The notes under the pieces are model-generated. The model searched no databases and was not told where the DNA came from. It saw only the letters and a program-made list of their open reading frames with translations. A stretch of 63,269 nt of DNA, counting the filler, from Octopus bimaculoides (lineage: Eukaryota): the NCBI RefSeq assembly GCF_001194135.2. It is 4 parts of 4 records of this genome, joined end to end, with 100 filler letters (N's around TTAATTAATTAA, not from the genome) between each part and the next. Parts side by side here need not be neighbours in the genome. Positions count along the whole stretch, not along the records: positions 1 to 19,390 come from NC_068988.1; 3 more parts are not named here. One strand, given 5' to 3'. How positions within the stretch are numbered: position 1 is the first letter of the stretch; each line of letters opens with the position of its first letter. Shown one piece after another: positions 3,104 to 4,235 of this stretch. Position numbers and translations under genes: made by a program.

Positions 3104-4235
3104 TTAATGAAAGTAACTGAAGGTGTATTTCCTCCAATGCTGGCATCTGTATGCTCTCTGTGTTATCTGGTTTACTAAATTATTCTTGGAGAACAGAATA
3201 TGGAATAGCTCCAAGTTACAGAGAGGACAAAAATCCTTACCCTTGTCGTAGGGTATCGGAGTAACCAGTATTGACCATTCCAAAGAGAATTGTTTATTGC
3301 AGTCCTTAAGTTTCCAGATTAATTTACTTAGACCGGTACTATTAATTTTTTTCCTTCCCCTAAAGGAAGAATAATGGTTGGAAATTCTCTTGGAGACCTG
3401 CGTCGAGGAGCTACCCACATAATGCGGTGAGACTTTAGTTTTCTTTGTTTCAGGGCAGGAAACCTTTAAGTGTTTTACAGATCCACCTTTATGGCATCTT
3501 GGTTTTCTACCCTCCACGAACACTGACAGGCGAGTGCCGACCGGGAGATCGATTAGGTCGTGCAGTTGGTCTATATGGTCCTACTTGCATTGCAAGGTCA
3601 GTTCCATACCTATACCGCACCAGTTTTGCTTAGGTAGTTTCTGGACCTCCCGTATTGAGACTTCGTCTTCTTCTAAACCTGCCAAGACGGCTGCCACTAA
3701 TCAGGTAATGGATATTTCTGGCAGCACATTCAGCACCCTAATCTTAGCAAGACGCTGGCCGCGATAGCTGGGGATTATGAAAAAGTTGTCATTCTTCAAA
3801 GTGGTTCTGGAATTACATTTGGCTTCTACTTCCGTCCCAAATCTCACCTCAGTGGTTCCAAATTTATTTCCTCGGGTGATGTGGATCTTTTGTTCCCACA
3901 CGCGCCCAAGGCATTTTCGTACTTCGCTCTCGAGAGCGTTTTCCACCCGCTGAAACTTGACTCCGATGCAACGGTCTGTGACCGTGCATTTTGCGATATC
4001 TTCTATCACGTCCGATGGAGATTTTAGAGCTACCCTTCTCTCATCTTTGCTACTGTTGTTGTTCTCTTTAAGACACCTGAAGTTTTGACGTTGCTTAGAG
4101 ACGAAACATTTTTCGCCACGGTGACGTCATTAAGTTTAAGCCATTCGTTGTTCTCATTTTTATTTCCTTGTTCTCAAAATTTCTCAAGGAGCGCGTTCCT
4201 TTATCGAACATCATGATGGCTTCTTTATCAGCCAT
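3104..4235 (-). pseudogene. Disrupted ORF: LINE ORF1-like region, CCHC knuckle (one Cys lost) and GIY-YIG endonuclease
   Basis: One frame from 4009 to 3104 with two stops: ...ITRGNKFGTTEVRFGTEVEA...PSYRGQRLAKIRV...WCGIGMELTLQ...VFVEGRKPRCHKGGSVKHLKVSCPETKKTKVSPHYVGSSSTQVSKRISNH...LSKLIWKLK...CPLCNLELFHIL...NLVN...CQHWRKY. The ORF1 part aligns to the ORF1 at 62496-63269. The upstream part from ATG 4235 is frameshifted. Confidence 0.8.

What the first reader, a model, noticed from the sequence alone, without database searches (positions are those of the whole stretch)
3104..4235. LINE ORF1/gag-zinc knuckle fused in frame to a Penelope-type GIY-YIG endonuclease, with no RT
Seen: one minus-strand frame (4009-3104, two stops) whose first ~185 aa align motif by motif with the ORF1 at 62496-63269 (TRG.K..T.EVRF.TE.EA; PSY.G.R.A; W.G.G.ELT.Q; V.VEGR.P.C...G...H.K..CP). 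About ten residues after the knuckle it continues as YVG...KRISNH...LSK.IW.LK...CPLC.LE...N...CQH..K, with no stop in this domain and the Arg/His/Glu/Asn positions intact. The first (GIY) half-motif is not obvious and may be replaced by the knuckle. No RT is seen in ~860 bp downstream or ~250 bp upstream. Known: L1/Tx1 ORF1s precede an APE-RT ORF2, whereas PLE GIY-YIG domains are normally joined to RT; standalone GIY-YIG ORFs occur in giant Terminon PLEs. I know of no described gag-plus-GIY-YIG ORF. Inference: either an undescribed RT-less retroelement supplying RNA chaperone and nicking functions while borrowing RT in trans, or a one-off chimera that happens to be in frame.
Basis: partly seen in the sequence, partly recalled or inferred. 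Interest (0 to 1): 0.85.

Follow-up and report, generated by a model that had tools for sequence, protein, structure and literature searches.

The report
Chance junction of two dead retrotransposons
The in-frame "gag plus GIY-YIG" reading frame is real, but it is a one-off join between a decayed LINE ORF1 fragment and the tail of a 5'-truncated Penelope-like element, not a new kind of mobile element.

Summary
One minus-strand frame (4033-3104) runs from a LINE ORF1-like region, with a zinc knuckle, into a GIY-YIG-like region, and the window holds no RT.

The interpretation as a new RT-less retroelement is not supported.
- **ORF1 half (4157-3425).** It belongs to an octopus L1/Tx1-like LINE. 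Relatives (O. vulgaris L016, 80% DNA identity; L008; L007) continue past this point into an ORF1 tail and an APE-RT-zf-RVT ORF2. Here it is a pseudogene: a frameshift and about 70-90 nt missing near the N-terminus, two stops, and the second knuckle Cys changed to Gly.
- **GIY-YIG half (3421-3107).** It is the last 105 codons, up to the natural stop, of a Hydra-clade Penelope-like element. It carries that clade's CxxC..E..N..CxH signature. It starts at the YIG motif, so it lacks the GIY strand, the CxCX5C linker and the RT that relatives carry upstream.
- **Breakpoint.** LINE homology ends at 3424 and PLE homology begins at 3422/3421.
- **Recurrence.** None of 2056 phmmer hits in 1.84 billion proteins spans both halves.

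The best reading is a 5'-truncated PLE copy joined to a LINE 5' part by insertion and deletion, in frame by chance (1 in 3). The source genome itself could not be searched.

The parts
4491..4560 (-). (ATT)n microsatellite directly upstream of the LINE 5' end
   Evidence: Sequence read. The same (ATT)n-to-ATGGC..CCATACTGTGAA junction is present in O. vulgaris L016.
4158..4490 (-). 5'UTR of an L1/Tx1-like LINE copy with a complete 5' end
   Evidence: 82% identical to L016 5616-5992, the region directly upstream of the ORF1 start there.
3425..4157 (-). LINE ORF1 pseudogene. Start ATG at 4157-4155 is in a different frame from the main frame. About 70-90 nt are missing relative to L016 between about 4150 and 4050. 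The main frame runs from about 4050 to 3425.
   Evidence: blastn gives 80% identity to L016 6195-6801 and 77% to L001 168-760; both alignments end at window 3424. tblastn places P0002, P0004, P0005, P0010 and P0011 here.
3701..3703 (-). In-frame stop TGA in ORF1; relatives have Trp or Leu
   Evidence: P0003 reads ITWLV, P0001 reads ITLLV.
3581..3583 (-). In-frame stop TAG in ORF1; protein relatives have Gln (CKQDHIDQL in P0003, P0006)
3455..3496 (-). Degenerate CCHC zinc knuckle C-x2-G-x4-H-x4-C; the second Cys codon is now GGT (3487-3485)
   Evidence: The L016 DNA at the aligned position reads TGT CAC ACA TGT ... CAC ... TGT, translated by me as CHTCGSVNHLKASC, an intact knuckle.
3421..3425 (-). 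Breakpoint: LINE homology ends at ..GTCTCACCGC (3424); PLE homology begins at TTATGTGGGTAGC (3422/3421)
   Evidence: After the breakpoint L016 and L001 continue T(G/A)CCAACATTACAAA..., while L013 reads CCTTATATAGGTAGC before its YIG motif.
3107..3421 (-). Last 105 codons of a Hydra-clade PLE ORF: the GIY-YIG endonuclease from the YIG motif to the natural C-terminus. Y205, G207, R216, H220, E275, N288, CPLC and CQH are present. The GIY strand, the linker and the RT are absent.
   Evidence: phmmer and tblastn to P0015, P0016, P0018, P0026, P0059, P0163, P0192, P0233, P0239 and P0243, most starting at 3421-3424 and all ending at 3107-3149. Alignments A3 and A4.
3104..3106 (-). Natural stop codon of the PLE ORF
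   Evidence: Relatives end within a few residues of the CxH..K motif.
2990..3103 (-). Probable remnant of the PLE 3'UTR; extent uncertain
   Evidence: Weak similarity to octopus PLE copies for about 50 nt past the stop. No hammerhead ribozyme found.
2860..2989 (-). AT-rich, (AAT)n-like low-complexity tract following the PLE tail; possible insertion target
   Evidence: Sequence. Hydra-clade PLEs insert in (TA)n (PMC8557442). L014 and L013 tails abut (TA)n.

Best explanation
This is a single, non-functional junction between fragments of two ordinary retrotransposons in an octopus-like genome.

**Shown.**
- An L1/Tx1-like LINE copy entered by normal retrotransposition. Its complete 5' end abuts an (ATT)n tract, exactly as in the O. 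vulgaris copy.
- A 5'-truncated copy of a Hydra-clade Penelope-like element lies directly 3' of it in the same orientation. This clade carries its GIY-YIG endonuclease at the C-terminal end of the RT ORF. Only the last 105 codons plus a short 3'UTR are present.
- The LINE's remaining ~3.3 kb (ORF1 tail, APE, RT, 3' end) is absent.

**Inferred.** The PLE cDNA was 5'-truncated within the endonuclease, as PLE copies very often are. A deletion, either accompanying the insertion or later, joined the codon after the ORF1 knuckle to the YIG codon. The shared frame is a 1-in-3 accident.

**Consequence.** The product cannot work as proposed. The ORF1 part has a frameshift, a deletion, two stops and a broken knuckle. 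The endonuclease part lacks the first beta-strand with the near-invariant GIY tyrosine and the zinc-finger linker.
For: - **No spanning protein.** phmmer against 1.84 billion representatives gave 2056 hits in two disjoint sets, query residues ~3-203 and ~195-309. No hit carries both domains. The junction ORF found nothing in the word-index search and is not in the collection.
- **LINE copies read through the breakpoint.** L016 (80% identity) and L001 (77%) are collinear with the window only down to 3424, then continue with LINE sequence.
- **ORF1 is normally followed by ORF2.** L016 ORF1 is followed by APE and RT. In L008 the ORF1 is followed by Exo_endo_phos + RVT_1 and zf-RVT. L007 is similar.
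- **The EN half is a PLE tail.** Relatives carry the PLE linker, thumb and RT upstream. P0059 and P0109 show LDVTF..YRKP..HP. P0233 hits RVT_1 weakly. P0239 has the DKT motif and a YRDDG motif. The features match the Hydra-clade description in PMC8557442.
- **Octopus EN copies extend upstream.** L002, L009, L010 and L013 all extend upstream of YIG into PLE sequence.
- **PLE insertion anatomy in a relative.** L014 shows an inverted 5'-truncated pair in (TA)n with a hammerhead-like motif.
- **The GIY tyrosine matters.** Y232 is nearly invariant in the family, and beta-1 is part of the predicted beta-beta-alpha-alpha-beta-alpha core. The window lacks both, and the truncated model forms no sheet.
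- **No RT or APE in the window**.
- **An open EN half is not evidence of selection.** Simulated neutral decay of 5-10% leaves it stop-free in 19-43% of trials.
Against: - The genome the window comes from, and cephalopod genomes in general, could not be searched at the DNA level. 'Junction occurs only here' therefore rests on protein collections that include O. vulgaris, O. sinensis and several Logan runs, not on an exhaustive copy count.
- The rest of the LINE was not found downstream of the PLE tail, so a simple nested insertion is not demonstrated and a deletion has to be assumed.
- No target-site duplication could be defined.
- The PLE 3' boundary is uncertain because octopus copies are only 67-75% identical.
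- The EN half is free of stops and frameshifts over 105 codons. This is compatible with neutrality but also with some constraint.
Confidence: 0.85

Rival explanations
1. It is a template-switch chimera. A reverse transcriptase began on the 3' end of a PLE RNA, jumped within the endonuclease region onto a LINE RNA inside ORF1, and copied it to its 5' end. The result would be one chimeric retrocopy, still a one-off dead product.
For: - Both parts have the same orientation.
- The 3' part is the exact 3' end of one RNA, and the 5' part reaches the exact 5' end of the other.
- The breakpoint is sharp, with at most 1-2 nt of ambiguity.
- This would explain a LINE 5' part without its 3' part without invoking a deletion.
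- Chimeric retrocopies of this design are known for mammalian L1 (own knowledge).
Against: - The LINE 5' end abuts (ATT)n exactly as in the independent O. vulgaris copy. That looks like a normal LINE insertion junction rather than a random 5' join.
- On the element's sense strand the downstream flank is (AAT)n-like, not (ATT)n, so the two flanks are not halves of one target.
- No target-site duplication was identified.
Confidence: 0.1
2. It is a real RT-less, non-autonomous retroelement family. Its ORF would combine an ORF1-type RNA chaperone with a PLE nicking domain and borrow RT in trans.
For: - The frame is continuous across the junction and the EN half is open for 105 codons, with Y, R, H, E and N retained.
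- The source genome could not be searched for further copies.
Against: - No junction-spanning protein was found among 1.84 billion representatives, which include ORF-level calls from O. vulgaris and O. sinensis assemblies and octopus Logan runs.
- The ORF1 half carries a frameshift, a deletion, two stops and a Cys-to-Gly change in the knuckle.
- The nuclease lacks the near-invariant GIY tyrosine and strand and the linker zinc finger.
- The breakpoint falls inside a beta-sheet rather than at a domain border.
- The stop-free EN half is expected by chance in 19-43% of trials at 5-10% decay.
Confidence: 0.03
3. It is an assembly artefact. Two repeats were joined wrongly in a short-read scaffold.
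For: The window is a gap-rich scaffold with many N runs next to microsatellites, and both partners are repeats.
Against: - The junction lies inside one uninterrupted contig (about 2260-5860), not at a gap.
- The two repeats share no long sequence at the join that could mislead an assembler.
Confidence: 0.02

Closest known systems
Hydra-clade Penelope-like elements (Craig et al. 2021, PMC8557442)
   Same: The EN half is homologous to the C-terminal endonuclease of this clade. It has CxxC before the catalytic Glu and CxH after the Asn, and it ends at the natural ORF end. Relatives show the CxCX5C linker, no CCHH between GIY and YIG, the DKT motif, (TA)n targets and a hammerhead-like 3'UTR motif. 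Mollusca are a reported host phylum.
   Different: Only the last 105 codons are present. The window has no RT, no linker, no GIY strand and no hammerhead motif. It is a 5'-truncated dead copy.
L1/Tx1-type LINE ORF1 proteins (nucleic-acid-binding region plus CCHC knuckle, followed by an APE-RT-zf-RVT ORF2)
   Same: The N-terminal half is 80% identical in DNA to an O. vulgaris LINE whose ORF1 precedes APE-RT. It is 31-40% identical in protein to ORF1s in L007 and L008 with the same context. O. vulgaris is reported to hold L1-Tx1 families (PMC13282606).
   Different: Here the ORF1 is cut about ten residues after the knuckle, is frameshifted, carries two stops and has lost one zinc ligand. No ORF2 follows.
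Chimeric retrocopies made by RT template switching, such as U6-L1 chimeras (own knowledge)
   Same: Two unrelated RNAs joined head to tail in one orientation. The 3' partner ends at its natural 3' end.
   Different: No target-site duplication was shown. The LINE 5' junction looks like a standard LINE insertion junction, which favours insertion plus deletion.
PLE-related elements with separate gag-like or stand-alone EN ORFs: Chlamys-2_cBra with an upstream zf-CCHC ORF, and Terminon stand-alone GIY-YIG ORFs (PMC8557442)
   Same: A zinc-knuckle protein and a GIY-YIG nuclease occur within one retroelement.
   Different: In those elements the two are separate ORFs of RT-bearing elements and belong to other PLE clades. 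Here the knuckle is of LINE origin and the join is a breakpoint inside the nuclease fold.

Membership tests
Hydra-clade PLE (C-terminal EN+) | Endonuclease homologous to the C-terminal domain of an RT-bearing PLE ORF | tested here: met
   P0163, P0233, P0239 and P0243 (578-618 aa) carry RT motifs upstream. They align to the window only from about their YIG motif to their C-terminal region (3448-3421 down to 3107).
Hydra-clade PLE (C-terminal EN+) | [quoted passage not shown] | tested here: met
   The window reads CPLC-NLE ... NNLVN ... CQH. The feature is described in PMC8557442.
Hydra-clade PLE (C-terminal EN+) | CxCX5C linker upstream of GIY, and no CCHH between GIY and YIG | tested here: not met
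   This region is absent from the window and replaced by LINE ORF1. It is present in relatives, for example CNCRIKDDC in P0059.
Hydra-clade PLE (C-terminal EN+) | PLE reverse transcriptase with the DKT motif in the same ORF | tested here: not met
   No PLE RT anywhere in the window. P0239 has ADKT.
Hydra-clade PLE (C-terminal EN+) | Hammerhead ribozyme motif in the 3' region | tested here: not met
   No hammerhead family hit in window 2241-4700 at E<=10. In relative L014 there is only a weak Hammerhead_3 hit (22.7 bits, E=0.1) and a visible CTGATGAG..CGAA motif.
Hydra-clade PLE (C-terminal EN+) | Insertion into (TA)n | tested here: inconclusive
   An (AAT)n-like AT-rich tract starts about 110 nt after the stop. 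The true 3' end is not defined.
GIY-YIG nuclease superfamily | Catalytic set: Tyr of GIY, Tyr of YIG, Arg, His, Glu, Asn | tested here: not met
   The YIG Tyr, Gly, Arg, His, Glu and Asn are present. The GIY Tyr (nearly invariant Y232 in family alignment A5) and its strand are missing.
GIY-YIG nuclease superfamily | Significant profile or fold match | tested here: inconclusive
   Pfam PF01541 scores 18 bits against a 22.6-bit cut-off; 6 of 49 family members match at E<=0.01. The PDB profile search gave nothing relevant. The model of the window fragment has no Foldseek hit. The model of P0059 has the beta-beta-alpha-alpha-beta-alpha order. Its best PDB hits include the GIY-YIG enzymes T4 EndoII, Hpy188I and UvrC, but all at E>0.7.
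L1/Tx1-like LINE | ORF1 followed by an ORF2 with APE endonuclease and RT (plus zf-RVT) | tested here: not met
   Absent in the window. Present after the homologous ORF1 in L008, L007 and L016.
L1/Tx1-like LINE | Intact ORF1 with a CCHC knuckle | tested here: not met
   Frameshift, about 70-90 nt missing, two stops, and the knuckle reads C-x2-G-x4-H-x4-C.
   No junction-spanning protein. L016 and L001 lack the junction. A DNA search of cephalopod genomes was not possible with these tools.

The most novel reading that the evidence does not exclude
The chimera was copied further, for example mobilised in trans through the PLE 3' end. It would then exist as a small family of RT-less ORF1-EN elements in this octopus lineage, and this locus would be one decayed member.
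Probability: 0.03. Interest if true: 0.6.

Novelty: already known. Interest (0 to 1): 0.1.

Why it matters
It matters mainly as a negative result. An eye-catching "gag fused to GIY-YIG nuclease without RT" turns out to be an ordinary product of 5' truncation and deletion in a repeat-rich octopus genome.

It is also a caution for scans. Hydra-clade PLE tails are short, stop-free and common, and they will often land in frame with neighbouring coding debris.

One minor positive emerged. The window and O. vulgaris L016 together document an L1/Tx1-like LINE family whose 5' end abuts (ATT)n in both copies, with a ~0.5 kb (ATT)n-flanked companion repeat nearby. They also document old Hydra-clade PLE remnants in octopus.

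Tried and rejected
- **Word-index protein searches.** The whole frame found only P0001, a chimeric astacin-ShK model with an ORF1 piece. The junction ORF found nothing.
- **Exact look-up.** The window ORFs are not in the collection.
- **ORF1 resuming downstream of the PLE tail.** I searched with the only 43 nt of post-junction LINE sequence then known, from L001. The best matches were at chance level, 25-27 of 43. blastn with L016 also gave no match for L016 6801-10111 anywhere in the window. A simple nested insertion is therefore not shown.
- **L016 10111-10654 as the LINE 3' end.** It matches window 5036-4496, and I first took this for a tandem LINE. I rejected that reading: the unit is bracketed by (ATT)n on both sides in both loci, so it is more likely a separate SINE-like repeat.
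- **L001 804-900 as a displaced ORF1 remainder.** It matches window 15721-15626, but it is a SINE inserted in L001.
- **Hammerhead ribozyme in the window.** None found.
- **PLE 3' end by alignment to octopus copies.** The copies are too diverged beyond about 50 nt after the stop.
- **Structure route.** The window-fragment model has good pLDDT (83.6) but no PDB match. The full-domain model of a relative gave only non-significant GIY-YIG hits.
- **Supplementary files of PMC8557442.** Not held, so no direct comparison with named Hydra consensus sequences was possible.

Full report
**Observation.** The minus strand of window 4240-3104 translates as one frame with two stops (TGA 3703-3701, TAG 3583-3581). 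It runs from an ORF1-like region through VFVEGRKPRCHKGGSVKHLKVSCPETKKTKVSPHYVGSSSTQVSKRISNH... to ...CPLCNLE...N...CQHWRKYTFSYFH*. The last 139 codons form an open ORF (3523-3104). Pfam sees only a sub-threshold GIY-YIG match in the C-terminal part (E=0.003, 18 bits against a 22.6-bit cut-off).

**The two halves have separate relatives.** phmmer of the 309-residue conceptual protein against 1.84 billion representative proteins gave 2056 hits.
- The hits fall into two disjoint sets. One covers query residues ~3-203 and consists of ORF1-like proteins. The other covers ~195-309 and consists of short proteins ending in the GIY-YIG-like domain.
- No hit carries both domains. A few EN hits begin at 175-180, because their own cysteine-rich linker aligns loosely with the knuckle.
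- The word-index search with the junction-spanning ORF found nothing.
- The window ORFs are not in the 15-billion-protein collection.

**The ORF1 half is a LINE pseudogene.**
- *Distant relatives.* In L008, P0004 (32% identical) is followed 38 nt later by an 812-aa ORF with Exo_endo_phos and RVT_1, then zf-RVT. In L007 (O. sinensis GCA_006345805.1), P0002 (40%) has APE and zf-RVT ORFs downstream.
- *Closest relative.* L016 comes from O. vulgaris chromosome OX597829.1. L016 5616-5992 matches window 4531-4160 at 82%. L016 6195-6801 matches window 4046-3424 at 80%. In L016 the ORF1 continues and is followed by APE and RT at 7574-9269.
- *Shared 5' end.* Both copies start right after an (ATT)n tract with ATGGC..CCATACTGTGAA. 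They share the 5'UTR and stay collinear down to ...AAAGTC(T/C)CAC(C/T)GC.
- *Divergence at the breakpoint.* From there L016 continues TGCCAACATTACAAACACC..., and the independent copy L001 does likewise. The window continues ATTATGTGGGTAGC.
- *Damage in the window copy.* Relative to L016 it has about 70-90 nt missing and a frame change just after the inferred start ATG (4157-4155). It also has two stops, and GGT in place of the second knuckle Cys codon.
- *The ATG at 4235.* It lies in the 5'UTR, and L016 has ACG at that position.
- *Host context.* O. vulgaris is reported to hold L1-Tx1 LINE families and PLEs, with expansions around JC distance 0.2 (PMC13282606). That fits the ~20% divergence seen here.

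**The EN half is the tail of a Hydra-clade Penelope-like element.**
- *Upstream sequence in relatives.* P0059 and P0109 carry upstream the PLE-type ...LDVTF..G...YRKP......SNHP... region, a CxCX5C cysteine linker and an (I/V)(I/V)Y strand before YIG.
- *RT in longer relatives.* P0233 and P0239 show RT motifs (FDI..FYPS, YRDDG). P0233 has a weak RVT_1 hit. P0239 has ADKT.
- *Host species.* One relative, P0192, is from Apostichopus japonicus, a species named by Craig et al. as a Hydra-clade host.
- *What the window retains.* It has the CxxC..E..N..CxH part and ends at the family's natural C-terminus.
- *PLE insertion anatomy.* L014 has a 5'-truncated copy with an adjacent inverted 5'-truncated copy, (TA)n on both sides, and a CTGATGAG..CGAA motif in the 3'UTR. 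The Rfam Hammerhead_3 match there is weak (E=0.1).

**What is missing from the nuclease.**
- Full-length-like PLE proteins align to the window only from about their YIG motif to their C-terminal region (3448-3421 down to 3107).
- In the family alignment the GIY tyrosine (Y232 of P0059) is nearly invariant, together with Y247, G249, R258, H262, E317 and N331.
- The AlphaFold model of P0059 has a confident beta-beta-alpha-alpha-beta-alpha core at residues 228-323.
- The window fragment starts inside beta-2, and its own model forms no sheet.
- Foldseek gave no hit for the fragment. For P0059 the best PDB hits include the GIY-YIG enzymes T4 EndoII, Hpy188I and UvrC, but none is significant (E>0.7). 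Fold membership therefore rests on motifs and the literature, not on a significant structural match.

**Octopus copies of the EN family do not carry ORF1 upstream.** Four independent octopus-like loci were examined: L002-L006, L009, L010-L012 and L013, all Logan runs SRR118693xx. All extend upstream of YIG into PLE sequence, covering the GIY strand, the linker, or the region before it. They are old copies, only 67-75% identical in DNA to each other and to the window.

**Nothing else of either element is in the window.** tblastn with LINE ORF2 pieces and with PLE RT-bearing proteins finds no APE or RT in the 19.4 kb. The LINE part downstream of the breakpoint (L016 6801-10111) has no match in the window. 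A search with the 43 nt of post-junction LINE sequence from L001 gave only chance-level matches. No hammerhead motif was found in 2241-4700.

**Mechanism.**
- *Shown.* A LINE copy with a canonical 5' junction, truncated at 3424. A PLE tail from 3421 to its natural stop, plus about 110 nt, followed by an AT-rich (AAT)n-like tract.
- *Inferred.* The PLE copy is a 5'-truncated insertion, a form that PMC8557442 describes as frequent for PLEs. A deletion, at insertion or later, removed the LINE's 3' ~3.3 kb.
- *Alternative.* RT template switching from PLE RNA to LINE RNA would also give this layout. I rate it lower because the LINE 5' end sits at (ATT)n exactly as in the independent O. vulgaris copy.
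- *Misassembly.* This is unlikely. The join lies inside a contig and the partners share no long sequence at the join.
- *Chance.* Same frame is a 1-in-3 event. Simulated neutral decay of 5-10% per site leaves the 105-codon EN half stop-free in 19-43% of trials, and 20% decay in 5%. Its openness is therefore not evidence of selection.

**Verdict.** The finding is a correctly observed but ordinary chimeric junction of two known retrotransposon types. The ORF1 half elsewhere leads to APE-RT, the GIY-YIG half elsewhere follows PLE RT and linker, and the junction was found nowhere else. The remaining uncertainty is that cephalopod genomes could not be searched at the DNA level.

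Noticed in passing
window 4565-5020 (minus), with (ATT)n at about 5020-5033 and 4491-4560; L016 10111-10654: A ~0.5 kb repeat unit is bracketed by (ATT)n on both sides. 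It is 81% identical between the window and O. vulgaris L016. In the window it lies just 5' of the LINE; in L016 it lies 3' of the LINE region. It looks like a SINE-like or non-autonomous partner that shares the (ATT)n tail or target with the LINE.
   Followed up: partly
window about 4490; L016 about 5657: The L1/Tx1-like LINE 5' end (ATGGC..CCATACTGTGAA) abuts an (ATT)n tract in both independent copies. This suggests a microsatellite-targeting LINE family, as known for some Tx1-clade elements (own knowledge).
   Followed up: partly
P0001 (metaclust, 449 aa): A predicted protein has astacin and ShK domains, and its last ~125 residues are 73% identical to this LINE's ORF1. It is either an exonised LINE fragment or a chimeric gene model.
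   Followed up: no
window 15626-15721 (minus); also 8183-8316, 9894-10027, 17372-17505: These appear to be short SINE-like repeats; my reading of 15626-15721 as the abundant tRNA-like octopus SINE rests on memory. That copy also interrupts the LINE copy in L001. The other three form a 134-nt repeat family found by the repeat finder.
   Followed up: partly
L014 5564-7330: A textbook PLE insertion: a 5'-truncated copy, an adjacent inverted 5'-truncated copy, (TA)n on both sides, and a CTGATGAG..CGAA hammerhead-like motif in each 3'UTR. The Rfam Hammerhead_3 match is only 22.7 bits.
   Followed up: partly
L008 14713-15217: A PLE RT fragment (P0233 residues 184-351, P0239 residues 203-342) lies about 2 kb downstream of the LINE in L008. 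LINE and Hydra-type PLE debris therefore sit close together elsewhere too.
   Followed up: no
L002 and L009 against P0015 and P0016: The Logan-derived proteins have Trp or Gln where the contig DNA has stop codons. The gene caller apparently used an alternative code, so these 'proteins' are pseudogene read-throughs.
   Followed up: partly
window about 2700-2752 (minus): A short tandem array of four copies of CTTGTTCTCGAT lies downstream of the PLE tail. Its origin is unknown.
   Followed up: no
window 4235-4095 (minus): A short upstream ORF (MADKEAIMMFDKG...) sits inside the LINE 5'UTR. Its ATG is ACG in O. vulgaris L016, so it is probably not the ORF1 start.
   Followed up: partly
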